This document shows, one piece after another, positions 683 to 59,660 of a stretch of 64,000 nt of DNA. The number at the start of each line of letters is the position of its first letter. The first letter of the stretch is position 1. This stretch comes from Hormiphora californensis (lineage: Eukaryota; Animalia; Ctenophora). The notes below the pieces were generated by a model. The model made no database searches. It saw nothing but the letters and a program-made list of their open reading frames with translations, and was not told the origin of the DNA. Location of the stretch: positions 6,634,001-6,698,000 of the forward strand of contig CM035350.1 of NCBI GenBank assembly GCA_020137815.1, given 5' to 3'. The translations under genes were made by a program, and so were the position numbers.

Positions 683-3600
683 GAGTGCCAGTCACAATGT
701 TGTTGATAACCTAGTGCGACTGCTTGTTGATAAGTCCGAACGTGTCCAGGTTGCAGCAGCTGTCACGCTCCTCGCGATCGGGGCCTCCGTCGAAAAGGTA
801 AGGCGCGAACTACGAAAGTACCGTGCGCGCTCATTGTCAGCATTTAAATTTTCCGCGCGTCCCCGTAGCAACAACCTCCCCGAACATGTGCTTTTATTGA
901 TCCCCACGGCGGACAACTCACAACACCACCGCTTCCTTTTTCAGGCTAAATCCATCCTGCTGAAGTCATTGGGACGACCCGATACAATGCAAGCTGATGT
1001 GTGGGCGGCTGTGCAGTGTTTGGCTATGGAGAATGTAAATGAGAGGATCGTGATCGATAAGTTGATCATCATGACCCAGTCCCTCGACCCCCTAGTTCGT
1101 GTGACATCTACCAAGTTGCTTGTTAGACTGAGCCATCAAAGTGTACGTATAAAACATGGGGGGTCTTGCTGTCATAGTGATACCCGGGGTGGTATAGGAA
1201 ATGGGAGACAGGCCGGGAGGTAGGAGCGTCTGTGGGATGTTATAATACCATCTATTTTGTCCTGGCGAGGAGGTGACACTCTCAAACACATTGCTTCACA
1301 AAGGCATGGATGTCTAACTAAAGCTACTCTCTCAGAACGTTGTGCTGTTTATGGTAGCGGACATTCTGAACAATAAAATGTGGGCGAACAGATACATGGC
1401 CTGCAAAGTAATCCAGAAAATTAAAACTCGTAAGTGAAAAAAACATCATTTTCCAATGCTTTTTCTCCCTGTATGGCGGTGCCAGACCCCGATTTGATTC
1501 TCAGATCGACAGTACATGCAAATGGGGTCTGCGGCGCCAGACAACTATCTCCCTCATATCACTTCAAATATGAATTATTGAATTCGGTTTAATTCTGTCA
1601 ACAATGCCTCGAGAACAAATTGACAACAGAATTAGAGTGAGAGTGAGTAGTAGAGTCGATAACTACATCGACCTCTCCCAATTGTTCCAGTTTTTGTCAC
1701 ATCAGTTTGGAGCCTCGACACGACCTCTAAACAGGTGTTACTTTTTCACAAACTGTTTTCATCTTGGTGTAATCAGCAGTTGAAATGTTGTTGATCATAA
1801 CAAAAACCTGACTAAATTTTTTCAACTTGGGGTAAAACCATGGGTGTCAAAAGTTAGCTCTAGGTCCCCTGAGTAACCATCCGGAGACTCCAAGAGATAT
1901 TTCAAGCCGTTCTCCTGTAATCATTAATCCCGGTAGAGCACATATTTGAGTATGGACGTACGTGCAATTGCCTACAACCTCAACTTTAATGTATAACGTT
2001 AATGTGCGTCTCTCTCTTTTCTCCCCCTTGAGAAAGAGTTATCTCGCGCGGTGCAACCGCACGTGCGGTTTTTCCAGAGAGAGTGAGAGACATACAATAA
2101 CATGTAAACAGCCTGCCAGCGCTCACGTACGTCCGCATTGTATTTTTTTCTCCACCGGGATTAATGATTACGGGAGAACGGCTTGAAATATCTCTTAGAG
2201 TCTCCGGATGGTTACTCAGGGGACCTAGAGCTAACTTTTGACACCCATGGTTTTACCCCAAGTTGAAAAAATTTAGTCAGGTTTTTGTTATGATCAGCAA
2301 CATTTCAACTGCTGATTACACTAAGATGAAAACAGTTTGTGAAAAAGTAACACCTGTTTAGAGGTCGTGTCGAGGCTCCAAACAGATGTGACAAAAACTG
2401 GAACAATTGGGAGAGGTCGATGTAGTTATCGACTCTACTAGAGGAGATTCACGAGAAAGAGAGATTGAGGATGAATAAAATAATTGGATGGAGTGAAATG
2501 ATAATATTTCCACTACCTAGTGGCTAGTAACCAGCCTGCGAAAAGCTGCTTTTTCTTTTGCAGCTCTGGCTTGGGCAAGTCGCGCTATCCCCTGTGCGTG
2601 GCCAAAGCTCTGGCCTGCAAAGTAAATGGCATACTGTTTATTTTGATAGACGAGGACGCCCGCCAGATCGCTGGAATTCCCGCGAATTTTTTCCGATAGT
2701 TTTAACAATAAAATTCTTCTGGAGTATCCCCCGCCCCGCTAATAATTAGGAATACTATTACTCACACTAATCCTGGGGCCAGTGACCGCATTAAACGACA
2801 TTCCTTGTTTATACTATAACGAGATGAAGGCTGAGGGGGGTCGAGGGAGATAGATTGAGATGAGAAAAGAGCTAGAGAATTGATAGCTACCGGCCCCCTC
2901 CCCGTCTGAATATTTAACGGCTTAGTCTAACCGCATGTTAGAACAACAATAAATCGTCATAATATAGCAATACGAAAATGTCGCAACCTTCTTTCTCCAA
3001 TTTCTCATCTGTAATCTAAGCAGCTTTCCCTATAACTCTACCCGACCCTCAGCACAACAACACTCCTATCCCCTGAAATATTCCCCCCCCCCTCAGCGCT
3101 GAACAAGGACATTCTCCACAAGTTGCTGACAATTATGTGGACCGACTATTCTGAGAGCGTGAGATCTGTAGCAGCGGAGACAATTGGTGTAAAGGGTCAT
3201 GGGAACGTAAGTAACAAAAAAAAGTAATCAAACACCCTCAAAATTGTTTTTGCTGCACCCCGCCCAAGAGTTTAGTTTACATTCAAACTACAAATTCCAT
3301 AAGTAAGCACTCATATTGTCCTTGGTTGACCAGGTGTGAACCTATCCCACCCCATTTCCAACGTTATGTCCACGTGATCCATCATTTCCTGGGACAATGC
3401 CCCATATCCCGGTATCCAGGGTCGGTCTGGCCCAGTTGGGCTATCCACCCCACTGTCCACCCTCGGTGCAGACTGGTAGAACTCCGTCTGCGAGCTGTTG
3501 TTCCATCGTTTGGAGGGCAGTAGAGAGAGCATCTCCTCCTGTTCTCCCGGTCTGGACCGGAATGCCTGGAATGCGAGGAGAGAGGCGTAGGTGAGTTCCG

Positions 3601-6600
3601 CGGGGACCACCATGTTGTGAATGAGGTCCACCATGGTGTCAGAATTAAACAACCCTGCAGGTGGGATGAGGCCCATTAGACGGAGTAGACGTAGTAGGAA
3701 ACTTTGGAGACCAACCACAACGAACACTAACCGGACTGCCACCCATCTCTTCTTTATTCTCTGTCCAACGGAGGGGTAGAATTGTCGAGTGACGCTGATT
3801 AACCGTTTTATAGCCCTGATCCCCACAACAAACAGCACCACTCCAACACCCAGAATAGTGTTCTCCGCAGCGTCAGGAATGTTGAAGGATGCCGTGATCA
3901 TGATGGCGATCAGATAAGTTATAACTCCAGTATAGACGAGGGTTTTGTTAAATAGCAACCGTCGCCTAGTCAGGGTCACATATCGAGTCATCTTGCAGCA
4001 CCAGCAGCAAATTGTAGCCTCGTAGGTGAACCCTGGTAACAGGGATAAGAGGTCGTTCCACTGGCCGTAGAAAGAGGTGAGATGTTGGTAGAACTGCAGA
4101 ATACAGAACACCAGATAGAGGAATCTAAAGGAGGATAGCAGCTCTGTAGTGGATGGATTGTAGAGCTCGATCACACTAACTATCGAGGAGAAGGGAGCCA
4201 GGGAGGCTAGATATGGGATCTCCCTCCCGGTATCAGGAAGTGCACCAAACAGTAGGTACAGGAGCAGGAGGAGTTGTCCCGCCGCTAGGACCGAGTTGAG
4301 ACTAGTGAAGATGAGGTAGATAATGCTGGGACAGGATATGAAGGCATCCTGGAAGGTAGGGTAGGAGTCCAATTCTTGACAGGATTCATTAGCACCGTGA
4401 TATAGCATGATCTACTAGCTGCAGTAAAACACAGAGAGAGTTGGGTGTGTATTTGGTAGCATGAGTCAGGGGATCGTGTATTGTGTGTGCACGTGCACAG
4501 TATTGACAATGCGAATTAAATGCACTGGATCGACCAATCCGATGTCTCCTTATAGATCACGTGATCTCCATCCACCAATCAGATCTCTTCCTTCCTGTCA
4601 CATGATCTTACATCGTAGGATATGGGAATTACCTGTGCAGAGAGAGATTTTATGAGCACCAGTGGTGGTGGTGAGACTGTCGGTGCAAATTTACCCTCCT
4701 CAAACTATACTACTACACAATTTGCCCCTTGGCCCTTACCTATTATACACGCTGTGCAGTGTAAAAGCTGTTTAGTAAACACGCTGGTATACTGCAGTAT
4801 GGGAGTGGATATTGATATGATAATGGATAATAATGATCTGTTATCTGGGTTATCCTGGTCTGTCAATATCCCGGTTAATTATGAACATATATACTATAGA
4901 CTAGCATTAGGTATTTAGGGGTGACTTTGTAACCAATAGTAACGTAGCTTTAGTGAGTAGTGTCTTCAAAAGGGCCCATGTCTAGTGGACACAAACAGAC
5001 AAAAGCCTAAGTAAACACACAAAGCACTCGATATACGGCTAGCCTTTGTTGATTAATCTCTCACTCAACAAGCTAGCAGCTGGGATCGGGCCAAAATTCA
5101 GCCCTGCCAATACCACTCATGCATATCATAATCTACTCATATTATATTCCCTCTCCATTTTATCATTCAATTCTCCTTGTTGTGTCTCTTACACTCCCTG
5201 AACTTAACCCCCGCCCCATTCCCTAGTCCCCAACCTAGCCTAGCCCCCGATCCAACCCCCACCTAGTCTCCAACTCAACTTCCATACCCCAGCCTACTCC
5301 CCACACCCCAGGGCCCCCAACTAAACCTCCCCACACCCCAGGGCCCCCAACTAAACCCCCCCCCCCACCCTACTCCCCACACCCCAGGGCCCCCAACTAA
5401 ACCCCCCCCCACCCTACTCCCCACACCCCAGCCTACTCCCTGCACACCCCAGGGCCCCAACTCAACCCCCACACCCCAGCCTACTCCCCACACCCCAGGG
5501 CCCCCAACTAAACCTCCCCCCTGCCTACTCCCTGCACACCCCAGGGCCCCCAACTACTCCCCACACCCCAGGGCCCCCAACTACTCCCCACACCCCAGGC
5601 CCCCAACTACTCCCCACACCCCAGGGCCCCCAACTAAACCCCCCCCCCTGCAGGTTCTCCACGATGAGCTGTGTTGCCGGTTAAAAAGTGGCAGTGAGAC
5701 GGAGAGGGTAGACGCTCTTCATCGTGTTGTCCAACTCGGAATGATGACGGGTCGCATGAAGACCGTGTTTCTCCGCTGCTTCGTAGCTGATCACGTTTCA
5801 GTGCGATTTAATGCCGCCAAGGTCAGTAAAATTAGAGAATAAATGGATTATCGGGGTTCTGCTGGCATATTTCCGGGATTATTCTATTTTGGAAATATGC
5901 AGGCATGTTAATAGAATGGAGTCTGAAAGAAAAGTCGACATTTTTTTCTATCGAACAATAATAATCTTTGCGGACCTATATTTAATGCAATTCCCTTCTT
6001 CTGTACATGAACGGAATAGTAATATCCTAGCATCCTGGACCGTGCCTATCCGGTTCCATTCCTTTGAAGATATTCTACTTCTCTATCATATTCAGCTCTT
6101 TCCTAGAAATCCTTCCGACTATTTCCCCTCCTCCCCGCAGGCTGCAGGACAACTGAAATTCGCTGACAACGATGTTATCGAGGGATTAATCACATTAATA
6201 AGTGAGGACCATTCAGCTAAAGTCAAAACGGCAGCGATCGAAGGTATGGGTCATAATTCCCATATTCTATATCGCATCCTGGGCTTTTCTTGGATACGTG
6301 GCTTCCGTAGAACCCTGAAAACCCCTATTATACCCCTTGCAAGGCATTGCCTGCATAATTTGCGAAAAGTTTTCCAAGATGAAGAGCATTATTGGAGCCT
6401 TTCCCACTTCATATAAGACCCTTGGTTACGAAATAACCCCTCTAAAGACCTTCGCGCGCTGGCAAGGGAGGGGTAACTTCGTTATCAAATAAGACCCCTA
6501 TTATCCAGACCAGTTCACTCTATGTTACCATTGTTCAAGAGCCACACCTCTCTAACCCAGCTTATACCCCAATTCAGCCTTGGCGGATATTGGTGTAGTG

Positions 6601-8357: not shown

Positions 8358-9807
8358 ATGCTATTTAGGAACAGCTGTATGGCACCTCTAATCACCCCGA
8401 CCCGGTTGCTCTATGTATCCGCGGCACTCTCCCGCTGGGGCGACCGAATGTGGAGTTTTGCCATTGGTATCTTCCTTATCAACCTGCATCCCACATCCCT
8501 GGCAGTGACGGCAGCCTACCAGCTGATAACCAATATCTTCACAGTGGCGTTATCGGGCAGTATCGGCCGGCTGATAGACAGGTCCGCCCGGTTACCAACA
8601 ATGCGGCTCACATTGTTAACCCAGAATACATCAGTAGCGCTGGCAAGTGGTTTAATGGTCGCTGCATTCCAATTGGAGATCTCATACTACTGTGATCGGG
8701 ACATATTCTTCCTGTTTATGGGGCTGGTTACAGTTCTGGGTGTCGTCTCCTCTCTCTCCTCCTCCTCCACCAACACTATAATTCAGCGGGATTGGATCGT
8801 CGTAATGGCAGGAGGGGACACGAGGAAGTTGGGGAATGTCAATGCCACAATGAGACGAATTGACCAGGTGTGCCTACTGCTTAGCTCCCATCCTATCGGG
8901 AGCGTTTGTCAGCGCTCTCAGTGCTTCCTGGGCTGCTGCACTCATAGCAGGGTGGAACGTGGTGTCACTGTTTTTCGAGTACACCCTGCTACGTTCAGTG
9001 TACTCCCGAGTACCAGGTCTGGCCAAAAAGAAAGAAGATGCTGCTGAAGAGACAACACCACCACCGCCATCATCGCCACTACAGACTATCAAATCAACCG
9101 TATCTGAGTACTTTGGTAGTTTCAAGATATTCTGCAACCAAAGTGTCGCTATCCCCGGGTTCTGTCTCTCCCTCGTATACCTAACTGTCCTCGGTTTCGA
9201 CTCCATTTTTGTGGGGTACCTCCGGATCAGTAGTGTGAAAGACTTTGCGATTGGGCTGGCTATGGCAGCCGGGGCAGTCTTTGGATTGATTGGTACGGTT
9301 GTGTATGCGCCGCTAAACAAGAAGAGCGGTGCCGCAGTTACTGGGATATTGGGTGCCGGTGGGCTGATTGTTTGTTATGGTCTGTGTGCTGGTTCCCTCC
9401 TCCTACCCACCTCCCACCTCAACATGACTACATTCCAGGATAATGGAACTGTGTGTCTCTCTGGATCTGAGGAGATATTACAAGGCACAGGCAGTGTCTC
9501 ACCCGCTACATACCTCCTCCTGACAGGCGTTATTACTATCAGATTCGGGCTCTGGGTGTTTGATCTGGGTATATCGCAGTTGTTCCAGGAGACTGTTCCT
9601 GAAGGACAGAGGAACACGGTGGGAGGCGTCCAGACGGCCCTGAATAGCTTCTTTAACTGTACCTACATCACCCTCACCCTTATCCTACCTAACGTGGAAC
9701 AGTTTGGAATTCTGATCGGAGTGTCCTGTGTGGCGTGTATTGGGAGTGCCTTGATTTACATAGCTTGGTTTACATGTGGTGGACATACAGGCAATCCCTG
9801 GAAGTGA
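8358..9807 (+). CDS. SLC40A1: Ferroportin (SLC40A1/FPN1) iron exporter, intronless, with one extra base near 8880
   Basis: Motifs LSRWGDRMWSFA, IQRDWIVV, NATMRRIDQ, LYLTVLGFD-like, RFGLWVFDL and QETVPEGQRNTVGGVQTALN. ORFs 8358-9047 and 8860-9807 join as IDQVCLL-LAPILSG if one base at about 8880 is removed. Confidence 0.92.
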
Positions 9808-20739: not shown

Positions 20740-21180
20740 TGTGAATAATTTAATAGATTGTCAGGCCAATGCTCTGGCCACGTTCTTCACGCAATGGTTT
20801 CGTGTTCTGATTGGTTCTGATTGGCTCATGTCACAGCCGCTAAACCCAGAGTATGATCCCATCCGATGTCAGATTTCAGAGGTGGTGCAACCACTAATTG
20901 CTAGAAACAGTTCTGATTAGGATTCGAGTGTCAAGTGTCGGGCTATAAATGTGTGTCACTATGAACAGTTTATTTCTTTCACTGATGAGGGCTATTTTAC
21001 GCCGAAACGTCTGTTTTGCTATTGAAATTTGTTCACCTTTGTAACATCCCGAGTCTTCTATGCCTGACCAAACTTCGAACCACGTGAGATCAATACAGGG
21101 ATCATCCCCTCAACATGTCTCTACCACGGACGGTGTCATCAGCCCTACACAGCTGATCCAGAGATTCTTCACGCAGGCCT
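20740..21180 (+). mobile_element. Penelope-like element pseudo-LTR fragment; boundaries approximate
   Basis: Tandem ATTGG (CCAAT) boxes at about 20810-20824, TATAAAT at 20944, and a minimal hammerhead about 35 nt downstream. This is the typical pLTR layout. Confidence 0.55.
20978..21015 (+). ncRNA. Minimal type I hammerhead ribozyme
   Basis: ca-CTGATGA-g-GGC-tattttac-GCC-GAAAC-GTC-tg: conserved core boxes, stem II GGC/GCC, a palindromic short stem III and a short stem I. Confidence 0.65.
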
Positions 21181-37004: not shown

Positions 37005-38002
37005 CAGATGGACAAGAAGTCAAAGGTGATTTTGGTTCTTTTGGACCTTTCTGCTGCCTAATGCCTTTGACACTATTTCGCATACTAAGCTGATCCATCG
37101 CTTGAAGCAGGATTATGGGGTGACTGGGAAAGTCCTCTGTTGGATTGAATCGTATCTCAAAGACCGCAAAGCAAAGGTGAAGATTGGGACAGCGGAATCG
37201 GAATCCAGGGCCATCGCTATTGGAGTGCCACAGGGATCTATTCTTGGGCCGCTCTTATTCATCCTATACACCAGAGACATGCAGAGAATTGCTGAAATGT
37301 ATGGCCTTAGCTTACATATGTATGCTGATGATAGTCAACTGGCCATTTCTTTCATCCCGAAAACCTTCAATGAAGTCGTCGAAAGAGTACAGAAGTGCGT
37401 GTCGCATATCAAAGTATGGATGGCACAGAACCTTCTAAAGCTGAACCCGAACAAAACTGAAATCCTTGTAATGAGAAACAAATGGGATAGATCTGATAAT
37501 CCAACGACCATAAAAATTGTTGATGAAGCCGATGAAGGTACTGAGGTTAAACTAACTGCGAAAAACCTTGGTGTCATTTTTGACAGCGAACTCACCATGT
37601 CCCAGCACATCTCTAGAGTGATTCAGTCGTGCAACTATCAGCTGATTAACATGTGGAGAGTTGCTGGCAATCTGACTAGGCAACAAAAGATCCAGCTTGT
37701 CAACTCATTAATTCATTCCAGAATTGACTACTGCAGCGCATTACTCGTTGGGATTAAAGACAGTGATGTGAGGCGCTTGCAGAAGCTACAAAATTCTGCA
37801 ACTCGTTTTATATTTGGCCAACGAAGTAGACGAGGTGTTACTGATCTCCGTAAGAAGTGCCACTTTCTACCCATTAGACACAGAGTCGAGTACAAGATAT
37901 GTCTGCTAGTCTATAAGTCACTTAACAACGACACACCCGGATACATGGCAGACATGGTTCAAAAGCGTAAACCAAAGGCTAAATGTCTGCGAGTGGATAC
38001 TG
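37005..38002 (+). mobile_element. 5'- and 3'-truncated CR1/L2-group LINE reverse transcriptase fragment
   Basis: LVLLDLSAA-FDT, GVPQGSILGPLLF, YADD, LKLNPNKTE, SRIDYC and HFLPI motifs. A small insertion creates a stop near 37060. Confidence 0.9.
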
Positions 38003-40277
38003 AGGACCCACTTTTTGGACGAAAAAAGAGAAGAAAATGGGAAAACATGCCAAAAAGTGAAAAAATCGTCGAAAAAAGTGAAAAAATGAGCCGATAAGGA
38101 ACCATAATAAAGTTCAAGAGCCTCCAAGAGCACCCAAGAGCGCACCCGATCGAAGAGAGACCACACCTGAGAGCGTACCACACCCAAAAGAGACCACATC
38201 CAAGAGCGCACCACCTCCAGAAGACACCACTTCAAGAGCGCACCACATCAAAGAGAGCTCCCCATCCAGAAGATACCACGCGCAGGGGACACCACGCGCA
38301 GAAGAGACCAGCGCGGCGTTGTATTTGCGCGTGCGGTCTCTTCTGCGCGTGGTGTCCCCTGCGCGCGGTATCTTCTGGATGGGGAGCTCTCTTTGATGTG
38401 GTGCGCTCTTGGAGTGGTGTCTTTTGGAGGTGGTGCGCTCTTGGATGGGGTGCGCTCTTGAACTTTATTATGGTTCCTTATTTTCAGTTTAAAAAACGAA
38501 TGCGCGCGGGAAAAAGCTGATGTGGCAGCGCTATTGACCAATATGGTCCAGACCACCCTTCGCGCGTTACATTTAAATGCATTTTCTGCAGCGCTGGACC
38601 CAAAAATTTTTTCGTGAATGAACGCCGCGCACCACCCCTGAAGGCTTGTTAGTGGTGGGGACGTTGTTTCGATAGGGATCCCTAAAAAAGTTCAGTATTT
38701 ACACAGCGTTTACACAGTCTTTACACAGTCGTTACACCCAGAGCGGCGCGTGCTGCGTTTTGCGGCTTTTTCTAAGAAAATATTGGATTGTGTGCTGCAC
38801 AATTGAGTAAATTGAGCGCTGTGGCGAAAAAAGTTTCCGAAAACGCTGCAAATCGAGTGCGAAAGACGCAGTCTTTACACCCAGAGCGGCGCGGGCGCTC
38901 TGGGTGTAACGACTGTGTAAAGACTGTGTAAACGCTGTGTAAATACTGAACTTTTTTAGGGATCCCTATCGACTGATCAAAACGGCGTTCTCCTAGCATT
39001 AACAATGTAAAGGGCTAAAAGCGGGATATAAACCATAAGGGACCAGTTACAGATTTGGAACCGGGCGTCAGTTTCCTGATGGGAGAATTTTTGCGCACTG
39101 CTGACAATGAATCCTGCTCAACTCCCAGGGGCGGTGCGCGGCGTTCATCCACGAAAAAAATTTTGGGTCCAGCGCTGCAGAAAATGTATCACGCGAGGTG
39201 GTTCTGGACCCTATTGGTCAATAGCGCTGCCGCGTAAGCTTTTTCTTGCGCGCATTCGTTTTTTCAATCGAAAATCGGCTCATTTTTTCACTTTTTTTGT
39301 GGGGGGGATCCCATGGCATACTTTGGTATACTTTGGCACTTTCCACGACTTTTTCAGCGATTTTCCATATACCAAAGTATACCAAAGTATACCAAAGTAT
39401 ACCAAGGTATACCAAAGTATACCATAAAAATTTTGAAAAAGGTAAAATTTAAGCGATAAGTTAACATAAATGACTAAATTTGTAAAACTACATCCTTATT
39501 TCTTTATAAGTTGGTAATATAACGCTTATTAAACCGATTTTTACGTTTTTGTTACATCATCCGGCTAGTGCTTCTAGGCTTGCCACTCGGGTTCGATTCC
39601 CGGTGAAGGCAATTTTTGAAAAATTTTTGGAGACTTTACCAAATACTATTTGAACATTTTCTTGACTTTTTAAAAGTTTTTTTTTTATCATACTCAAATG
39701 GGTCCCAATTTGTCAAACCCCAGTTTTCTGACTCACCATTTTATAGGTAATATTTTCCCTCGATTCTATGAATTTAGCCTATTTAGCACCATTGTCCAAT
39801 TTTATGAGTCAAGAAAGTTTATATAAAATGTTTTAAAGCCTTAACTGTTGTAAATTAACACTTTAAAGTACTTTAAAGTTATTAAAAAGATATGGTATAC
39901 TTTGGTATACTTTGGTACTTTCCACATATTTTTTTGGGATTTTCCATATACCAAAGTATACCAAAGTATACCAAAGTATACCATGGGATCCCCCCCTTTT
40001 TTGTTTGTTTTTACTGATTTTTTCACTTTTTAGCATGTTTTCCCATTTTCTTCTCCTCTCTCGTCCTAAAAGTGGGTCCTGGACCCAATGGACCCAGCCT
40101 TGCTTCGCACCTATGACAACTCCCCATTCATTCTAGCTGGATATTTCGTCGCGCAATGTAAATTATGACGCGCAGCATGATTCAATCGGGAATCTACCAT
40201 CAGGAATCTCACATCAGGAATCTCACATCAGGAATCTCCCATCAGGAAACTGACGTCCGGTTCCAAATCTGTAACTG
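38003..40277. mobile_element. Composite of nested and interleaved non-autonomous DNA elements
   Basis: Inverted-repeat pairs: AGGACCCACTTTT (38003 / 40080); TAAGGAACCATAATAAAGTTCAAGAGC palindrome (about 38096-38480); GGGATCCCTAAAAAAG MITE (38675-38966); CAGTTACAGATTTGGAACCGG (39044 / 40277). Also (accaaagtat)n arrays. Confidence 0.7.
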
Positions 40278-40662: not shown

Positions 40663-43600
40663 ATGGATGTAACTCTCGACTACGATGAAAGTTTCAGTAA
40701 GTAACAAGTTTGTACTGATGTATGGGGGGACACGTCCGGGGCGCGAGAGGTCATACGAAGTCAAAACACGGTGGTTAGTACGAACGTTTCGGGGTTGTGC
40801 CCCTTCTTCAGCTCAAATTAATAGTGTTGAAAAGTTTGAAACTCTGAAAAGATTGAAACTCTGTTTCAAACTTTTCAACACTACTTTAAACAAATTAATT
40901 TGAGCTGAAGAAGGGGCACAACCCCGAAACGTTCGTACTAACCACCGTGTTTTGACTTGGTATGACCTCCCACGCCCCGGACGTGTCCCCCCACACACCA
41001 AGTTATCACCCCGTCCGCCTTTTCAACAACATGAAGTTTGTACTGACTCAAACAATTTGTTGCTGTGTGATTGTTGTGGTTGGGACGGGGGTGCAGGTGG
41101 GGGGGGGGGGGGGGGTCCCCCAACTGTATCAGACATCCATGACCCCAAATACCCCTAACTGTCCTGACACCTGAAAGTTGGGACCCACACCTATTTTTCC
41201 AGAAAATTTCTAATTCTTGACAGTTAGGGGTCAACCTCTCCCAAATTCTTGGACCCACCCCCAAAAATAGTGCGGGTAGAACCCCAAATCGTCAGTGTGA
41301 TGCCTGACCAAAATCATAGTGCGCAAAAATTGGTCACTGTGGTGCCTTCAGGACCCAAAATTCCCAAATATTGACCCAAATTTCCAAAACAGTTGGGTTG
41401 GACCCCCCCTCCCCCCCCCCCCCCCCCCCCCCGGTTGGGAGTTTGTTGTTTGATTATTGGTTTGTTGTTTGATTATTGGTGGCGCTGTCACCTCTCGCGG
41501 GCTTCGTTTGGCGTGCTACACACGCGATTTGTAAGGGTGACTGCGTCACCAAGTTTGATTACAAGTGGGCATATATCGGCGATATGTCTACACTTGTAAA
41601 CACTAAACATTTAGTCTAACATCTAGATTCTAGACTAATATAAATTCCCCTCTCTTCAGAAACGAGTGACGTCAGCAAATTAGATAACACACAAGAAGGT
41701 AAGTAAAGGAGGGTTAGAACTGGTGATTGTGTTATAGTATTTCTCTGTATAGCACAAGCTAGGCTGCTTATATGTATGCTCTGCTTTATTGTGTATGCTA
41801 CTTATATGGTAGCATGCTACTTATATTGTCCTAACACTGGTTATCTATTTTCAGAGTTGGAAGACTCGTCATCAGAGGTAACATTGGTGTCCCTAACCTC
41901 CATAACTGGCTCCCTAATATATCTCCATGATACTGTCATGATAACACTCAATAATTGACAGTGATTTGAATAACGTTTTCACATAGGCTGCAACTAAACT
42001 AGAGTTCATCTCAGGTGGATGCCTCTTCTCCCAACAAAACAGGTGATTGTTCAGACTGGGGAGTGGGGTTTGGTTTGGTTTGGGCTGCTCATCTGGGACT
42101 GTAAACAGTCACACAGCCAGCCAAGTCTCGCTGTTTGCTTTTGCATCTAACAATGTATTGACCTAGTGTATTCTCACTTACTAAAGATTTACATTCTCTA
42201 CTATTTGCAGACAAGGAAGTGATAGAAGAAGGGGAGAAGGAAACAGCAGAGGGGGACTCACAAAATGAGGAGGGAGAAAAGGAAGAACCAGAAGCGGATG
42301 GTGCCAAATCTGACAGTGAAGAAAAAGAAAACGTAACATTCTAAAACACAATCACCGTCTGTAACTATCTCTCTCCACTCTCTTTTTCCATTTAAATTTG
42401 TTTCCCAAAATAACAAGTTAACTCAGGCCGAAGACGCTGTTGAACTCACATCAAACGCTTTTGAAAACGACCTTTTAGGAGCTGAGAAGAGACCAGGTAA
42501 ATGTGATATACAGATTGAACACTCGACAGATGTAGTCTTTTATCAAATTGTTGTTAATACAACTATTCTCTTTCAGAAGAACCCAAGAAAGAAGAGCCCA
42601 AAAAAGAGGCCACCCCTCCTCCCCCTGCAGTGCCTAAGAAAATTGCACCGGTATGAAATATCTTCTATCGACAAAACAACATCCAAAACACACTTCCCCA
42701 ACCATATCTTCCCTCCAATTTAGCCGCCCAAGATCCACAAGAGAGACTACGAGGTGCCAGAATCAGCGCCAGCGAGACCACGAATAAAATGGTCACTTGG
42801 CATCGTCAAACAACTTGTGTCCACTGATCTTCTCTCGGTGAGCGCCAAACGAGTCCGATCAGTGAAAAGTACACTGCTTCAGCACTTCTACCTCTACACT
42901 CTAATGTTTGCGGCGCGCGATCCTTCTTTTATTTTGCTCAGCTCCAATTCAAAATATGCGAGTGAAATGAAAGCAATTAACTAGTGGAATGGAGGCAATT
43001 AACTAGTCCTAATTAAACCCTCTGTTTTCCCAGGGAATGGTTGAGACAAAGCTGGTGAAAGAGGAAGAGCCAGTTAAAAAGAGGACAACTTCTCGGAGCG
43101 AGCAAGCCCCATCAACCCAACCCAAAAAACAGGCAAAACGGGAGGAAGAGGACCTAGATTTTGAGGAATCTGAGAACGATAGTGCTGCCGAACAGGAGAT
43201 GGAGCCTGCCCGAGATCCCACAGCCTTCCCAGCCCCACCATCGGAGCCAGTTGGTAGATCAAGAAAGGAGGAAAATAGAGCTCTTCTAATTGCCAATCTG
43301 ATCAGACCCTTCACGGTCCTGCAGCTAAAAACAATGTTGTCACACTGTGGGAAAGTTAAAAGTATCTGGATAAATACCATCAAGAGCCGCTGCTATGTTG
43401 TGGTAGGTATTTAAATACATGGTAGGAGCAACTTCTCTTTTTTTTAGCACAATCTCTAGAACTTTTTTTACTTGTATTATTGTGTGATTCCCTACCACTG
43501 ATATGTTTATTTGTAGTTCGCCACGATTGAAGAAGCCCAGAGGGCCCGAGAGTCGTTGCATGGATCAGTGTGGCCAAGTACCAGCCCAAAAACACTCTCA

Positions 43601-54035: not shown

Positions 54036-57000
54036 TACAAATACAAATACAAATACAAATATACATTTATTGTCCGCTTTTCATTGTTCATATTTTAAAG
54101 AACAACACGAGTTCTGTTAGGTCTTGACTACTTGCATCACTTGGTGCGGACTTCGTCTCACTAACTCTCGTTTCAAAAGCGGTTAGTTCTATACCAAGGA
54201 TTTCCAGATGTTATTTCAAGATGATATTTTTTCTGAAGGTAGGTCTTGTTAGTTAAACGATATTTAAATCGGATGATGAAATATATAATACTGTCTCTGC
54301 TTACTGCAGATTGATAAGATATGCTCTTGGATCTAGGGATCCAGAAATAAATACTTTAGCACCAGGGCTTTAGCCCTTAAACAATCGATACTGTCTTATA
54401 CAACCTGGGTGAGGACTGATGATCCGACTACTTCACCTGTAGGAGAACCAAGGAGCGGGAGAGAAGTCATACTCGTTGTAGCCTGCATCTCACCACACTG
54501 GCTGTACTTCTATAAGTAAAGCCCATCACACTCCACTGCACCACACCATACCGACTGTACTTCTATAAGTAAAGCCCAACACACTCCACTGCACCACACC
54601 ATACTGGCTGTACTTCTATAAGTAAAGCCCAACACACTCCACTACACTACACCATACTGGCTTCACTTCTTTAAGTAAAGCCCAACACACTCCACTGCAC
54701 TACACCATACTGGCTGCACTTCTATAAGTAAAGCCCAACACGCTCCACTACACTACACCATACTGGCTGCACTTCTATAAGTGAAGCCCAACATGCTCCA
54801 CTGCGCAACACCTCACTGGAACCCTTCCACCCCCATACCCCCAATTTTGGTGTCCATTTATAATTTATATCCCCCTTTTTTCTTTGCCCCTTTTTTGTTG
54901 TCTTTTTTCTTCTTTTTTTTTTGGATCTTTTCTGCTTTTTTTTTTTTTTTTGATTTTTTAACCCAGGCTCTTTTTTTACCGAGTTCTGGAGATCCGTCAC
55001 ATAAAAAGAACAAGTATTAAATATAAATTAGTAAGAAAGACCAGTTTAGAAAGAGTGAGTGAAAAGAGTACTGGTCGTTCTAACTTCGCGGTATCACACT
55101 CTAATTCGGGATCCTCAATTCTCTCTCATCTCTCTACCACAATTCTCATAGTATAAATTGTCTTCACACATTGTTTTTTTTTAGCACTCGTATGCCTTTC
55201 GGAAGAAGTGGGTTTTCAGGTTGGATTTGAATGATGTGATGGATGAGCTTTCCCGAAGAGAAGAAGGTAAGCTATTCCATATTTCCGGAGCAGCGACACT
55301 AAACGCACCTTTACTCGAACAATATCTGGCATAGTTCTTGTCAAGTAAGGTTTTGTCAGCATCCCTTCGTAGACTTTTTAACTTCGGTTGACGGAGTGTT
55401 ATCATCTTCGATAGGTAAGGTGGGGCTATACCATTCAGTGTTTTGTATGTCAGTAGACACAACTTGTACTGCACTCTTTCTCGAACGGGTAGGAAATGAA
55501 GCTGTTTGCGAAGGTTTGTGGTGCCTTGGTAGAGGCGTTGTCCAAAGACGAAACGGGCTGCAGAGTTTTGAATTTTCTGTAATCGACCTATGTCTTTGGC
55601 AGAAGAACCAGCAAGGAGGCTGTTACAGTAGTCCAGTCTGCTGTGTATTAAACTGTTAACGAGTTTGACTTTCAGATTAACACCCAACATTCTGTGGATT
55701 TTCCAAAGATTCATAAGGGCTAGTTGACACGTCCTTACGGTTCTGGATACGTGCCCAGATAGGGAGAGCTCTGAGTCCAGAAATACACCAAGGTTCCTTA
55801 CTAATGTAAGTGGCTTTGTAGATTCATGGTTGCTCATCGTTTGAAGGCTTTCAGGGTTTTCTGTTTTATCATGTTTGTTGTTTAACACGATTATTTCAGT
55901 TTTGCTGGGGTTGAGTCTGAGGAAGTTCTTGGACATCCACGCTTTGATGTGGTTTAAGCAACCCTGCAGTTTCGTCTCGAGGTCTAGGAGAGAATCGTTG
56001 CTGAAAGAAACATACAACTGAGTATCGTCAGCGTAGAGCTCCACCATTAGTCCATAGTGCCTAGCAATACTTTCCAACTCTTTTGTGTACAGAATGAACA
56101 ACAGTGGTCCAAGTATAGAGCCCTGTGGCACTCCGATGTTGATGGCTAAGGGCGAGGATGTAGAGGTCTCAATTTCACAGAAGCTTTCCTATCTTTGAGG
56201 TAGGAGGCAAACCATTCAAGGGCAGTACCTTCAACGCCATAATTCCTCCTCAGTTTCCCAAGTAACAATTCATGGTTAATCGTGTCGAAGGCAGCACTGA
56301 GGTCTAGCAATACAAGTACCGCCTTCGACTTCGTGTCTGTAATTAGAAGAAGATCATTCACTACTTTTACCAGTGTGGTCTCGGTGCTATGATGTTTCCG
56401 GTACGCCGATTGAACTCCTGGAAACAGTTCGTTCGTCTCAAGGTGCTCCGTAAGCTGTATAGACGCACATTTTTTCAATTAGCTTGGATATAAAAGCTAA
56501 GTTGGATACCGGTCTGTAGTTATTTAGTTCTTCCGGGCTTCCTTTCTTCTTGAACGAGGGTCGAATCAGTGATTGCTTCAGCTGTTCAGGAACTAAACCT
56601 TCTTGTAGGCTTTTGTTGACAATGTCAGAGATAAGAGGAAGTAACTTCGGGAGAACACCTACGAGTTTGCTGGTAGGGATAGGATCGAGATCACAGTGCT
56701 TTTTCTCCATAGATTGAATTATAGCACTGAGTTCCTCTTCAGTTACTTTACGGAAGGATGAAAATGTGGCACCAGTGTAGTCAGTTTGTGGTAGTTCTGG
56801 CAATGGTTCAGATTGTTCGTTTTCAACTCTGATCGTCTCGTAGATATCCTCGATTTTCGATTTGAAGAAAGTGCCAAAGTTTTCTGCTGTTTCACTCGAA
56901 GAATTCCCGTTAGGAAGCTCCTGTGGGATCTTGTCTTTTCCCAGTAGTTTGTTGATTAACCCACTGACAGCAGCTGGATCATCAGCCACGTAGTCAAGCT

Positions 57001-59660
57001 TTCCACGATAGAAATTTATCCTGGTTTTCATGAGAAATCTGGATGTTTCTTTCATAGCTTTATTCAGAGCTGTTCTAGCTTCTTGTGTTCTTCTTCTTCG
57101 TGGAGTCTTTCAAGGTCGTCTTCAGAGCTCTTTCTCGTGTCCTGCGGGAGGTTTTAGCTTCCTCACATAGAGTATCATACCAAGGTGGGTGATCCGAGTC
57201 TTTAATAACCTTTTCCTGTAGTGGAGCTATCTCATCCCGTATTTATCGAAGTGAGACGTTGTACAGGTTGAGACACCCTTCCAGTGTAGAGGGACGTGGG
57301 ATTGACATCAGCTGTGACTCATCTATTTTCATAGATAGGACCTCAACAGTGAGCTTTTTCATGTTTCTGCACAGAACAGCTTTTCTTTCTTGCTGAATTG
57401 GTTTTCCGACGTGTAAGTAGAATGTGACAGCATAATGGTCTGAAACGGAGGATTTTGCAACCTCGACTGCACTAATCCTAGGTGAAGCTTCATCATCTCT
57501 GCTTATCACTAAGTCCAATGTACCGCCACTTTCGTGGGTTGGATCCTCGACATGCTGTGTCCATCTCTCATCTACAAGCAAATCACGGAAGGAGTTTGAA
57601 GTATGATCATCGTCATCCTCAGTATGGATATTGAAATCGCCCAAGATAACAGGGTGTCCACTGAGGCCGTTTAGTGACGATATGTACTCTTCGAATTCTA
57701 CCAAGAAATCCTTTTTGGAAGAGGAAGGAGGTCTGTATACCACCACCAATCTAGTTTTCTGAAGATACCCGCCTTCGATCGTAGCTTCGATACATTCAAA
57801 AGTTGTTGGTTTGTTCTTAGTCTTGATAGGTATTACACGTAATGCTTTCCTCGCTAAGATAGCGACGCCGCCTCCTCTTGCCCCTCTTGCCGAACTATAG
57901 AGATTGTATCCTAATTCTTTCATCAGTGCAGGGGTGACTACGTCACCGTCTTCTAGCCAGGTTTCTGTCAAACCGAGTACGTCAAGGTCAAGATCGCAGC
58001 ACGCCCCGTAGATTTCACCAAGTTTGTTGTTCATCGATCTGCAGTTTAGATTGCCGTATTTGAGAGCAAGGTGCTGCGTTGACGGTAGTTTTTTGAAATA
58101 CGATCATAGTGCTCTTTGTACGTTGGGCATTTAGGTGAGCCAGCATGGTGAGGTTGAACATCTGAGGAGAGTCCTGAATTGTTGATACAGTTTTTACAGC
58201 GGTGTTTCTCAGTGTCCTCTTTCAGTGAACAGCTTTCAGTAGAATGCTCTTCTGCACAATACATACATGTCGCTGGATGGGATTTCTTCGGGCATTTATC
58301 AGGGTAGTGGCCAAGGGCTTGGCAGTGAGGACATCTCTTGATGTGTACACGATGAGACACTCTGACGGAAGACATTTGGAAGAAGACCCTACCGTCAGAC
58401 ATAAGCTTGTCCTTCAGCTGCACTGGTAGTTTCAGGACAACTGTGGCTAGGTCCGGGTCTGTATGCATGCGTTTGAAATAGACAACGGAAAGGTCTTTGC
58501 AGGTTCTCAGAACTTCATTCTTCGCTGTTAGCTTTTCGAGACAGAATTTTCTACATTCCTCCGTTGTGGCATCTCTTGGGAGTGACTCAACAGGGACAAA
58601 CCTGAGTTCTACTTTTGACATTACCTCAGCGGACACTCTGGCAGTTTGCTCTAGCACTCCTGCAGTCTTCAAACATTCTGTGGCCAATTGTTGACATTCC
58701 TCATTGGGAAACCACACTCTTACCGAGGAAGAAAAGTTCCTTGCTTGAGAGATAGGTATATTTTCCAAGGCTTTGTCGATAGCATTCCTCGTCTCCTTCA
58801 CATCATCACAGTGGATCGTCAATCGAGGCTGGGGTGGAAGTACTTTTCTCGGTGTAACCTTAGGAGGGGTTTGGTTTTGGACACCTGAACGAGTTGTATC
58901 ATTGTTAGTTCTGTCGGTGGATGTTGTGCCGGTGCGTTGAAGTGAGGAGCTACTGTTGGATGAGGGTAGCGGTGGAAAATGTTCATTGTTCAAGATGCCC
59001 ATAGTGGTTTCAGATTGAACGGGAGTGGTTGTTGGTTGCCATGCGTTAACAGTTGAATCAAGGTGAGAGTTGTTATGGATGTTTGATTGGTCAGCCATCA
59101 GTTTAGCTGCTTTAGTCGCAATAGCGTCAAACAAGGGACTACCGGCTCGAAGAAGCTGGGCAGTAACGATACACTCCGGGCAAACCCAGTCATCAACGCA
59201 TAAAAGGCCCTCTTCAGAGATTTCAAGGAATTTGCTCAGGGATTTCAAGCTAACGCACTCGTCATGGTAGCAGCATTTGCACGTGATACACTTGATCATA
59301 CGCCCACTTGATTTGGTCCCATTGCATAGACATTGTTGAGCGGATGTGAAATGGCGTGGAGTTTGAATTGGCATTGAAAAGTTATTGGTTCGTGGAGGCG
59401 TTGATAGATGATTTGCAGGGTTGGGATGGGCAAGGGTTTGGACAGTGATTGCCTTAGGGGTGGTGGTTGGATCATCGAACGGTGAAAATTCCGTCCCACT
59501 TCTTGTCGTGGACATGATGGATATGCAGGATTCACTAGTGGAGTGGGGATCGAGGGGATTGTGTGTACTCACAGTTGTCGTTGTTGGCTGCAAAAGGAGT
59601 AGATACCAGTGACTTGATCGTAATTATCACAGGATATCTCAGGTTATCTCAGGTTATCGA
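54036..59660 (-). mobile_element. Near full-length CR1/L2-group LINE. ORF1 58046-59593; ORF2 (APE endonuclease + RT) 58034-55181, split by frameshifts
   Basis: ORF1 has a PHD finger (CLC..CITC..YHDECV..WVCPEC) and three CCHC knuckles. APE motifs LTETWL, GDFNIH, TLDLV and SDHY. RT motifs NYRPVSNL, LDLSAAFDT, PQGSILGP and YADD. AATAAA plus an (ATTTGT)n tail at 54036-54071; whether 54036-54480 belongs to the element is less certain. Confidence 0.92.
54490..54810. repeat. 53-bp tandem repeat, about 6 copies, in the LINE 3' region
   Basis: acttctataagtaaagcccaacacactccactgcaccacaccatactggctg units. Confidence 0.9.

What the first reader, a model, noticed from the sequence alone, without database searches (positions are those of the whole stretch)
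40899..40946. Predicted switch: the trans-splice acceptor is also the 5' strand of hammerhead stem I
Seen: the sequence after the GUA cleavage site is CTAACCACC. Its stem I partner should sit just before CUGAAGA and would read (GGT)GGTTAG, which ends in TAG, a splice acceptor. The SL end TTTGAG pairs only partly with it (AG/CU, then a bulge). Inference: the unspliced precursor has a full stem I and self-cleaves, while trans-splicing replaces that strand and weakens the ribozyme. One RNA would then have two exclusive fates, cleaved template or capped stable RNA.
Basis: inference. Interest (0 to 1): 0.85.

Follow-up and report, generated by a model that had tools for sequence, protein, structure and literature searches.

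The report
Spliced-leader-capped Penelope hammerhead retrocopy; switch unsupported
This stretch is where the comb jelly's spliced leader was joined to the small hammerhead-ribozyme motif of a Penelope-type jumping element before the RNA was copied back into the genome; the splice site does sit at the edge of the ribozyme, but the predicted full stem I, and so the proposed on/off switch, is not found in the source copies.

Summary
TTTGAG (40899-40904) is the 3' end of the published Hormiphora californensis spliced leader (SL). It is fused to CUGAAGA-A-GGGG/CCCC-GAAAC (40905-30), then GTTC-GTA-CTAACCACC.

It lies in a 315-bp head-to-head double retrocopy (40719-41033). The insert has a 13-bp target-site duplication, and empty-site contigs in two DNA runs show it is polymorphic. 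One arm carries a 33-nt tail. Together with the minimal hammerhead, this is the insertion signature of Penelope-like elements (PLEs).

The prediction is half right. All six non-SL copies end in TAG exactly at the SL junction, and two other hammerhead families do the same. They read ATATTAG or ACTAG, not GGTGGTTAG. No upstream partner for the 3' strand exists beyond chance. GUA/CUAACC occurs only in this insertion's two arms genome-wide. The family-wide reading is a dimer-type minimal hammerhead, GAAA-CG-UU|C. Its helix I pairs at 3 of the first 4 positions unspliced and 2 of 4 SL-led.

In another family the SL junction lies just outside an intact 4-bp helix I. The largest family carries a U4-to-C core change.

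The scan had already reported SL-capped Penelope hammerhead retrocopies elsewhere in this genome. A cis-splicing precedent is published for Drosophila virilis Penelope. The switch remains an untested idea, and no self-cleavage data were obtainable.

The parts
40706..40718 (.). Left copy of the 13-bp target-site duplication AAGTTTGTACTGA
   Evidence: Sequence. Empty-site contigs in runs X1 and X5 join 40718 directly to about 41050-41059 (table 5).
40719..40811 (-). Left arm: the retroelement unit read on the minus strand, 'short' form of about 93 nt without the tail. Its hammerhead core is 40786-40811.
   Evidence: Inverted repeat I1, 107 nt, 95% complementary. Core match. 3' end at reference position about 96.
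40812..40844 (-). Left arm's spliced leader: a 33-nt variant that lacks 11 internal nucleotides of the published SL
   Evidence: (L033) compared with the SL in PMC8527503.
40845..40862 (-). Extra 17-nt fragment of the SL 5' end, plus the junction at the axis of the palindrome
   Evidence: Direct repeat D8; sequence. Consistent with template switching at the RNA 5' ends (inference).
40863..40904 (+). Right arm's spliced leader, positions 3-44 of the published 44-nt SL, ending in TTTGAG
40905..40933 (+). Penelope-type minimal hammerhead motif. It reads C3-U-G-A-A-G-A9, an extra A, helix II GGGG/CCCC with loop CACAA, G12-A-A-A15.1, C15.2-G16.2 (palindromic), U16.1, U17. Predicted cleavage is between 40933 and 40934 under the family-wide reading.
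   Evidence: Features match the min-HHR description of Cervera and de la Pena 2014. Self-cleavage was not tested.
40935..40946 (+).
   Evidence: only the two arms genome-wide; other copies read CCAACCAACCACC and similar.
40934..41000 (+). Body of the unit, with the motifs GUGUUUUGAC and AUGACCUCCCAC conserved across subfamilies, up to the 'short' 3' end in an AC-rich stretch
41001..41033 (+). About 33-nt 3' 'tail', present only on the right arm
   Evidence: 3' ends fall into two classes, about 95-98 and about 124-132. Each of three inverted pairs has one short and one long arm. This matches the PLE tail that lies between two reverse-transcription start sites (PMC11167929; PMC8557442).
41034..41046 (.). 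Right copy of the 13-bp target-site duplication

Best explanation
Positions 40899-40946 are the junction between the host spliced leader and the minimal hammerhead motif at the 5' end of a short (about 97 or 130 nt), non-autonomous element mobilised by Penelope-like machinery. The element's RNA has a good 3' splice site (AU/Y-rich tract + UAG) directly 5' of C3 of the hammerhead core. SL trans-splicing at that site made a capped RNA of the form SL-hammerhead-3' module. Two such RNAs, or one used twice, were reverse-transcribed from the two nicked target strands up to their capped 5' ends. They were joined head to head, giving the 315-bp palindrome with a 13-bp target-site duplication and a tail on one arm only.

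Shown: the fusion, the acceptor in non-SL copies, the duplication and the empty allele, and the tail asymmetry. Inferred: the trans-splicing event itself, the double priming, and the use of Penelope-type reverse transcriptase.

The hammerhead is of the dimer-dependent Penelope type, with helix III reduced to the self-complementary ACGU and cleavage predicted after GUU. Its helix I is rudimentary in both the unspliced and the SL-led RNA. So in this family trans-splicing does not convert a complete ribozyme into a crippled one. This genomic copy is a fossil of an RNA, not a working switch.
For: SL identity: PMC8527503.

Family: 21 core copies, 14 with a recognisable SL, one with only its last 11 nt, and 6 non-SL ending in TAG at the same nucleotide.

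Same pattern in family 2 and family 3. Genome-wide there are 176 SL-hammerhead junctions against 2 for the control. They span at least 12 families whose helix II differs in sequence but always pairs, and nearly all have one extra nucleotide after A9.

Insertion: empty-site contigs in X1 and X5.

PLE signatures:
- one short and one long arm in all three inverted pairs;
- non-SL copies form the outer ends of head-to-head palindromes of up to 3.1 kb;
- GIY-YIG domains in 800-950-aa open frames in about 3.3-kb tandems elsewhere in the genome;
- published PLE features.

Minimal-hammerhead reading: GAAACGUU|C is kept in most copies, including diverged ones (L039, L048, L049-, L051-). It parallels GAAACGUC|U at window 20982 and GAAACGUU|U in L022.

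Helix I counts. No distal partner. GUA variant unique.
Against: No RNA evidence was obtained. The one putative RNA run (X22) covers only the SL part, and all runs are contigs, so starts and ends cannot be seen. No reverse-transcriptase ORF adjoins any copy of this family, so the link to Penelope machinery rests on structural signatures. Self-cleavage was not tested and Rfam models do not recognise the motif. One arm elsewhere (L013, minus strand) starts exactly at the nucleotide after GUU and is joined to an SL fragment. That could mean that cleaved RNAs exist.
Confidence: 0.8

Rival explanations
1. The reader's switch, in a weaker and more general form. In Penelope-type elements the 3' splice site at the edge of helix I lets splicing status tune hammerhead competence. 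Unspliced RNA cleaves better, while spliced and capped RNA is protected and serves as mRNA or as a full-length template.
For: The acceptor lies 0-6 nt from C3 in every family seen. In subfamily 2b the non-SL strand gives 5 of 7 pairs against 3 of 7 for the SL. In families 1 and 3 it gives one more pair. [quoted passage not shown] All SL-led retrocopies are by necessity uncleaved.
Against: There is no full stem I in any source copy. The SL's own terminal AG restores the core-proximal positions. In subfamily 2a pairing is equal in both forms. In the L067 family helix I lies wholly within the retained 6-nt spacer. Unspliced copies are also read through the cleavage site. Most family-2 copies carry U4C, a change at an invariant core position. 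In a vertebrate PLE, hammerhead mutants did not affect insertion and no RNA ends were found at the cleavage site (PMC11167929).
Confidence: 0.12
2. The hammerhead-like core is not a ribozyme in this family. It is kept because the reverse transcriptase or another protein recognises it, or it is an inert relic.
For: The 26-nt core is identical in 16 copies, including two (L035, L043) whose downstream sequence has diverged. That shows constraint, but not necessarily catalytic constraint. Helix I is rudimentary. The most amplified sister family has U4C. Metazoan PLE hammerheads have low activity in vitro and are dispensable for insertion in vitro.
Against: All invariant core positions are canonical here. 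The extra nucleotide, the G10.1-C11.1 pair and the self-complementary ACGU all fit the published minimal hammerhead. Many families show helix II covariation.
Confidence: 0.3
3. The locus is an SL RNA gene or gene pair, or a transposon that inserted into an SL gene (as NeSL or SLACS do), rather than a retrocopy of a trans-spliced RNA.
For: The genome holds 571 copies of the SL 3' part, and the genome paper counted them as leader loci.
Against: No GT donor follows TTTGAG here, whereas L053 has SL|GT. The empty allele contains no SL at all. The target-site duplication is unique sequence. The SL 5' ends abut with no room for promoters.
Confidence: 0.02
4. A DNA-level foldback element or MITE whose arms merely contain SL-like and hammerhead-like strings.
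For: A near-perfect 107-nt inverted repeat with a target-site duplication.
Against: The arms point outward from the RNA 5' ends. Across copies the arms have unequal 3' ends (tail) and variable 5' truncation. The SL boundary is exact to the nucleotide in 15 copies. The same junction type recurs in more than 12 unrelated hammerhead families.
Confidence: 0.03

Closest known systems
Minimal hammerhead ribozymes of Penelope-like elements (Cervera and de la Pena 2014, PMC4209133)
   Same: CUGANGA and GAAA core, one unpaired nucleotide between A9 and G10.1, a G10.1-C11.1 pair, helix III reduced to a palindromic 15.2-16.2 (here ACGU), and a short, poorly defined helix I. It occurs in dispersed, often inverted retroelement copies.
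   Different: No adjoining RT/GIY-YIG ORF. Helix I is weaker here (3 of the first 4 positions pair, with a mismatch at 2.2-1.2) than the 4-5 bp usual in that set. The 5' flank is a host spliced leader. Activity was not tested.
Drosophila virilis Penelope: spliceosomal intron ending at the 5' end of hammerhead helix I (Arkhipova 2003; Cervera and de la Pena 2014)
   Same: A 3' splice site sits at the 5' edge of the hammerhead, so spliced and unspliced RNAs have different helix I 5' strands.
   Different: Here the acceptor is used for SL trans-splicing, which also supplies the cap and defines the 5' end of the RNA that is copied. A functional consequence has not been shown in either system.
PLE insertion architecture: pLTRs, inverted 5'-truncated partner copy, 30-40-bp tail (Craig 2021, PMC8557442; Frangieh 2024, PMC11167929)
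   Same: Head-to-head inverted copies, a 33-nt tail on one arm only, two alternative 3' ends in an AC-rich region about 95 and 130 nt downstream of the hammerhead, and a target-site duplication.
   Different: Both arms reach a complete, capped 5' end (the SL) instead of being 5'-truncated. The unit is only about 100-130 nt plus the SL.
Relict spliced leaders in dinoflagellate retrogenes (e.g. PMC5585692, PMC6050394)
   Same: An SL found in genomic DNA marks retroposition of a trans-spliced RNA.
   Different: There the retroposed RNAs are host mRNAs. Here the RNA belongs to the mobile element itself, and the junction is tied to a ribozyme motif.
Non-LTR retrozymes and satellite type-I hammerheads of animals (PMC7229834)
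   Same: Small non-autonomous hammerhead-bearing repeats, probably PLE-dependent, with dimer-type hammerheads that have a short helix III.
   Different: Retrozymes are tandem repeats expressed as circular RNAs. These copies are dispersed, SL-capped and palindromic, with no evidence of circles.

Membership tests
Hammerhead ribozyme, Penelope-type minimal variant (min-HHR) | Catalytic core C3-U4-G5-A6-N7-G8-A9 ... G12-A13-A14 | tested here: met
   CUGAAGA at 40905-40911 and GAAA at 40926-40929. Identical in 16 copies.
Hammerhead ribozyme, Penelope-type minimal variant (min-HHR) | Helix II closed by a loop, with a G10.1-C11.1 pair and one unpaired nucleotide between A9 and G10.1 | tested here: met
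   A + GGGG-CACAA-CCCC, scored as a 4-bp stem with offset 1. The same layout is seen in 12 or more other families with different helix II sequences.
Hammerhead ribozyme, Penelope-type minimal variant (min-HHR) | A15.1, palindromic 15.2-16.2, U16.1, H17 (helix III formed only in dimers) | tested here: met
GAAA-CG-U-U|C, where ACGU is self-complementary. It is kept in most family copies.
Hammerhead ribozyme, Penelope-type minimal variant (min-HHR) | Helix I of about 4-5 bp (2 bp in D. virilis) between the strand 5' of C3 and the strand 3' of the cleavage site | tested here: inconclusive
   Non-SL copies: G-C, mismatch, U-A, U-A. SL-led copies: G-C, mismatch, mismatch, U-A. No distal partner beyond chance.
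Hammerhead ribozyme, Penelope-type minimal variant (min-HHR) | Mg-dependent self-cleavage 3' of H17 | not testable with these tools
   Only contigs were available, so RNA ends are not visible.
Rfam hammerhead families (type I/II/III, HH9, HH10) | Score at or above the gathering threshold of a curated covariance model | tested here: not met
   No hit even at E<=10. The same models miss all other PLE-type motifs in this genome, so this does not weigh against the minimal-hammerhead reading.
Penelope-like element insertion (non-autonomous) | Inverted or tandem partial copies with a 30-40-bp tail at one end and a target-site duplication | tested here: met
   Palindrome. One short and one long arm in 3 of 3 pairs, differing by about 33 nt. 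13-bp duplication and an empty allele.
Penelope-like element insertion (non-autonomous) | RT plus GIY-YIG ORF, in the element or supplied in trans by elements in the same genome | tested here: inconclusive
   No RT ORF in or beside family copies. GIY-YIG hits in 800-950-aa open frames in 3.3-kb tandems exist elsewhere in the genome, but no link to this family was shown.
SL trans-splicing acceptor | AG preceded by a U/Y-rich tract in the unspliced copy, at exactly the nucleotide where the SL's 3' end is joined | tested here: met
   Family 1: 6 of 6 non-SL copies. Family 2: TTTTTGTAG|. Family 3: TTCTATTTATAG|.
SL trans-splicing acceptor | SL-joined RNA observed | tested here: inconclusive
   X22 contigs carry the SL on other mRNAs, but none covers the unit. 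Trans-splicing is inferred from the DNA copies.
   Counter-example in L067, where helix I lies inside the retained spacer.

The most novel reading that the evidence does not exclude
A 3' splice site abutting hammerhead helix I may be an ancient, conserved feature of Penelope-type elements: a cis-intron in a fly, an SL acceptor in at least three ctenophore families. It would couple RNA processing to ribozyme competence. Splicing would give a capped, ribozyme-dampened mRNA or full-length template, while unspliced multimeric RNA would remain cleavable.
Probability: 0.12. Interest if true: 0.8.

Novelty: new variant of a known kind. Interest (0 to 1): 0.42.

Why it matters
What the hammerheads of Penelope-like elements are for is still open. 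They are conserved, yet barely active in vitro and dispensable for insertion in vitro.

This genome adds a clean natural record. In at least three families the host's trans-splice acceptor sits within 0-2 nt of the ribozyme core, and across 176 SL-hammerhead junctions it sits within 0-6 nt. The resulting SL-capped RNAs are templates that were successfully copied back. That makes the link between splicing and ribozyme directly testable with four short transcripts per family.

It also means that a large share of the '718 leader loci' reported for Hormiphora are probably retrocopies rather than SL genes. In a sample of 30 on chromosome 1, only one had a GT donor. This matters for annotating SL genes and 'shared first exons'.

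The specific switch proposed for this locus is not borne out by the source copies.

Tried and rejected
- Rfam at gathering and at E<=10 gave only palindrome-driven miRNA look-alikes and no hammerhead. The control on four other loci shows that Rfam misses this class altogether.
- The monomer fold of 40890-40955 is no more stable than shuffles (z = 0.64).
- I searched for a distal helix-I partner in 200 nt upstream of five non-SL copies. Nothing exceeded shuffles.
- I looked for an RT or endonuclease ORF next to family copies in L082-L084 and found none.
- I looked for retrocopies 5'-truncated exactly at the predicted cleavage site. Truncation points are scattered. Only one arm (L013, minus strand) starts at C1.1, and L015 starts 2 nt later. 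That is too few to count.
- RNA evidence: every run offered was Logan contigs, and the only putative RNA run covers just the SL.
Families 2 and 3 were therefore read only from the strings printed by pattern searches, and I could not check whether their 3.2-3.5-kb tandems encode RT/GIY-YIG.
- The SL-gene and MITE readings were considered and rejected (see rivals).
Full report
**What is at the coordinates.**
- TTTGAG, 40899-40904
- CTGAAGA, 40905-40911
- A-GGGG-CACAA-CCCC, then GAAAC, 40926-40930
- GTTC, GTA (40935-40937), CTAACCACC (40938-40946)

The genome is 110.69 Mb in 45 pieces, 13 of them large. This fits Hormiphora californensis. Its genome paper gives a 44-nt spliced leader (SL) ending in AATTTGAG, found on 56% of Iso-Seq reads and at 718 genomic places (PMC8527503). 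Window 40863-40904 matches positions 3-44 of that SL.

**The structure around it.** The segment is the right half of a palindrome. The arms are 40716-40822 and 40894-41000, 95% complementary. Each arm carries the same 26-nt core (2 matches, 0 expected).

The SLs lie at the centre with their 5' ends facing each other. There are three SL pieces:
- a 33-nt SL variant on the minus strand (40812-40844)
- a further 17-nt fragment of the SL 5' end (40845-40861)
- the 42-nt SL on the plus strand

The insert (40719-41033) is flanked by the 13-bp direct repeat AAGTTTGTACTGA (40706-40718 and 41034-41046).

Contigs of two DNA runs of the same species, from different samples and studies, join 40718 straight to about 41050-41059. 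An empty allele therefore exists. The insertion is polymorphic and so recent, and both SLs arrived with it. This rules out an SL gene or an insertion into one.

**The family.** The core occurs 21 times in the genome at up to 2 mismatches, against 0 for the control. By 5' context:
- 14 copies are preceded by a recognisable SL
- one copy has only the last 11 nt of the SL
- six copies have other sequence that ends in TAG at exactly the same nucleotide: CATTTATATTAG| (four copies), GTGTTGTATTAG| and CCATTACTAG|

The non-SL copies are the outer 3' ends of longer head-to-head palindromes, up to 3.1 kb in L082, without long ORFs.

The 3' ends fall into two classes, at about 95-98 nt and about 124-132 nt from the start of the core. 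In all three inverted pairs one arm is short and the other long. This is the 30-40-bp 'tail' at one end that is peculiar to Penelope-like elements (PLEs). It has been traced to two internal reverse-transcription start sites roughly 110 nt downstream of the hammerhead region (PMC8557442; PMC11167929).

GIY-YIG domains sit in 800-950-aa open frames in about 3.3-kb tandems elsewhere in this genome. The enzymatic machinery is therefore plausibly present, although I could not tie it to this family.

**Is it a hammerhead, and where would it cut?** Rfam gives nothing. It also misses every other motif of this kind here.

The motif matches the published description of metazoan PLE minimal hammerheads (PMC4209133):
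- canonical CUGANGA and GAAA
- one extra nucleotide between A9 and G10.1
- a G10.1-C11.1 pair
- helix III reduced to a palindromic 15.2-16.2
- a short helix I
- activity expected only in dimers, and low

In this family that reading is GAAA-CG-U-U|C. ACGU is self-complementary, and cleavage would fall between 40933 and 40934. Most copies keep it, including diverged ones. It parallels GAAACGUC|U at window 20982 and GAAACGUU|U in L022.

Other copies read GTTC-CAA/GAC/AAC/AAA there. The model's cleavage site and its 'CUAACC' strand are therefore a private variant with no source copy on record.

**Testing the prediction.** The AG at the junction is confirmed. The complementary GGUGGUUAG is not.

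Pairing in register:

| 5' strand | 3' strand | Pairing from 2.1-1.1 outward |
|---|---|---|
| non-SL | family-wide (CCAACC...) | G-C, mismatch, U-A, U-A, then nothing |
| SL | family-wide (CCAACC...) | G-C, mismatch, mismatch, U-A |

The last combination exists in no copy. No better partner lies within 200 nt upstream in five non-SL copies; 13-99% of shuffles did as well or better. Because the SL itself ends in AG, the core-proximal positions are the same before and after trans-splicing.

**Does the idea hold in sister families?** The pattern SL + 0-8 nt + CYGANGA + 9-20 nt + GAAA occurs 176 times, against 2 for the control. These fall into at least 12 families whose helix II sequences differ but always pair. 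Examples are GACG/CGUC, GCCG/CGGC, GUCGA/UCGAC, GGUGC/GCACC, GAUGC/GCAUC, GGCG/CGCC and GGGG/CCCC.

The SL is always joined 0-6 nt from C3. For two further families I read the non-SL copies:
- ATTTATTTTTGTAG|CC(C/T)GATGA, about 31 copies, against SL|CC(C/T)GATGA, about 25
- CTTTTCTATTTATAG|CTGATGA, about 10 copies, against about 40 SL-led

So a strong 3' splice site abutting the core is general.

The effect on helix I is small and inconsistent (my counts):
- family 2b: 5 of 7 pairs unspliced, 3 of 7 SL-led
- family 2a: 4 of 7 in both
- family 3: 4 of 7 against 3 of 7
- L067 family: the 6-nt spacer CUACUA retained after the SL holds a 4-bp helix I (against UGGU after GAAAUAUC|), so trans-splicing leaves it intact

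Most copies of family 2, including the youngest identical ones, carry U4-to-C at an invariant core position. Amplification therefore does not need catalysis. This agrees with the in vitro result for a lizard PLE. Finally, unspliced copies are themselves read through the cleavage site for more than 1 kb, so unspliced RNA was not efficiently cut either.

**Mechanism I commit to (confidence about 0.8).** The element RNA carries a 3' splice site at the 5' edge of its hammerhead. The host trans-splices the SL there. The short capped RNA keeps the 3' module that the PLE reverse transcriptase starts on. Both nicked target strands prime cDNA synthesis to the capped 5' ends. The cDNAs are joined head to head, with template switching leaving extra SL fragments.

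Shown: the fusion, the acceptor, the target-site duplication and empty site, and the tail asymmetry. Inferred: the trans-splicing, the double priming, and the enzyme.

The hammerhead is a dimer-type motif with a rudimentary helix I. Whether it cleaves at all is untested.

**Comparison with what is known.** Hammerheads in PLE terminal repeats, inverted partner copies and tails are all published. [quoted passage not shown]

I found no paper that links SL trans-splicing to PLEs or to hammerheads. Relict SLs in retrogenes are known from dinoflagellates.

The scan itself had already reported SL-capped Penelope hammerhead retrocopies at several other places in this genome, with about 140 fusions. 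My count with a looser pattern is 176.

**Limits.**
- No RNA ends could be seen.

**Verdict.** This is a new variant of a known kind. Interest is moderate for this specific claim.

Noticed in passing
window 20982-21011 (+): A second Penelope-type minimal hammerhead motif, not SL-led: CTGATGA-G-GGC...GCC-GAAA-CG-TC|TG. It lies about 30 nt downstream of a TATAAA at 20945-20950. A relative in L022 reads GAAACGTT|TG. In both, only a 2-bp helix I (CA/UG) is apparent.
   Followed up: partly
G000 genome-wide; loci L052-L081: The 32-nt 3' part of the SL occurs 571 times (283 + and 288 -). Of 30 copies sampled on chromosome 1, only one (L053, C1:428037) is followed by GT and a U-rich Sm-like site. The rest are fused to repeat families. 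Many of the '718 leader loci' of the genome paper are therefore probably retrocopies, often as head-to-head pairs 50-120 nt apart.
   Followed up: partly
L052, L054, L060, L062, L065, L069, L070, L073, L076, L079, L081 (just after the SL): Other SL-led repeat families start with a recurring GCCC-N4-GGGCAG hairpin (for example SL|CAGGAAGATGAATCCGATGTAACAGCCCCGAAGGGCAGAA...GAAACGTT). It may be a degenerate hammerhead or a different 5' module. I did not analyse it.
   Followed up: no
G000, family 2 (e.g. C2:2115900-2121933, C6:6711449-6718153): The most amplified hammerhead family reads CCGATGA, a U4-to-C change at an invariant core position, in both non-SL and SL-led copies. Only about 7-10 older copies keep CTGATGA. 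Non-SL copies lie as one inverted copy plus tandem copies spaced 3.2-3.5 kb apart, the arrangement expected of a full-length PLE.
   Followed up: partly
L013 minus strand (C3:2966545-2966607): One arm of an inverted pair begins exactly at the nucleotide after GUU (CCA-CCAACCACCG) and is joined to an internal SL fragment. This may be a copy of a hammerhead-cleaved RNA. It is a single case.
   Followed up: no
window 40861-41033 and L036 (folds): In the minimum-energy folds of the SL-led RNAs, the SL segment UUUUCA pairs with the core bases UGAAGA (6 bp including one G-U). It is not general, because CUGAUGA cores would have a central mismatch. I did not test it against shuffles.
   Followed up: no
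run X7 (organism B) laid on window 40863-40958: DNA contigs of a second species also carry SL-hammerhead fusions: SL followed by ...TGATGACGTTAAACGTCGAAAC, and a 347-nt contig covering the SL plus this family's core. The association therefore predates the split of the two species.
   Followed up: partly
window 41087-41136 / 41380-41432: A run of 17 G and a run of about 20 C form an inverted repeat about 270 bp apart, just right of the insertion. This may be another foldback element or an assembly-prone site.
   Followed up: no
window 37102-38097 (+); 55181-59593 (-): Reverse-transcriptase (RVT_1) ORFs: 331 aa at 37102-38097, and a string of minus-strand ORFs at 55181-59593. Their type (LINE, LTR or PLE) was not determined. 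Host genes also lie in the window: ferroportin (8860-9807) and an Ost-alpha-like transporter (3311-4408).
   Followed up: partly
window 39892-39992 and 40171-40260: A palindromic (TATACCAAAG)n microsatellite and a 14-nt tandem repeat (ATCAGGAATCTCAC)n lie upstream of the insertion.
   Followed up: no
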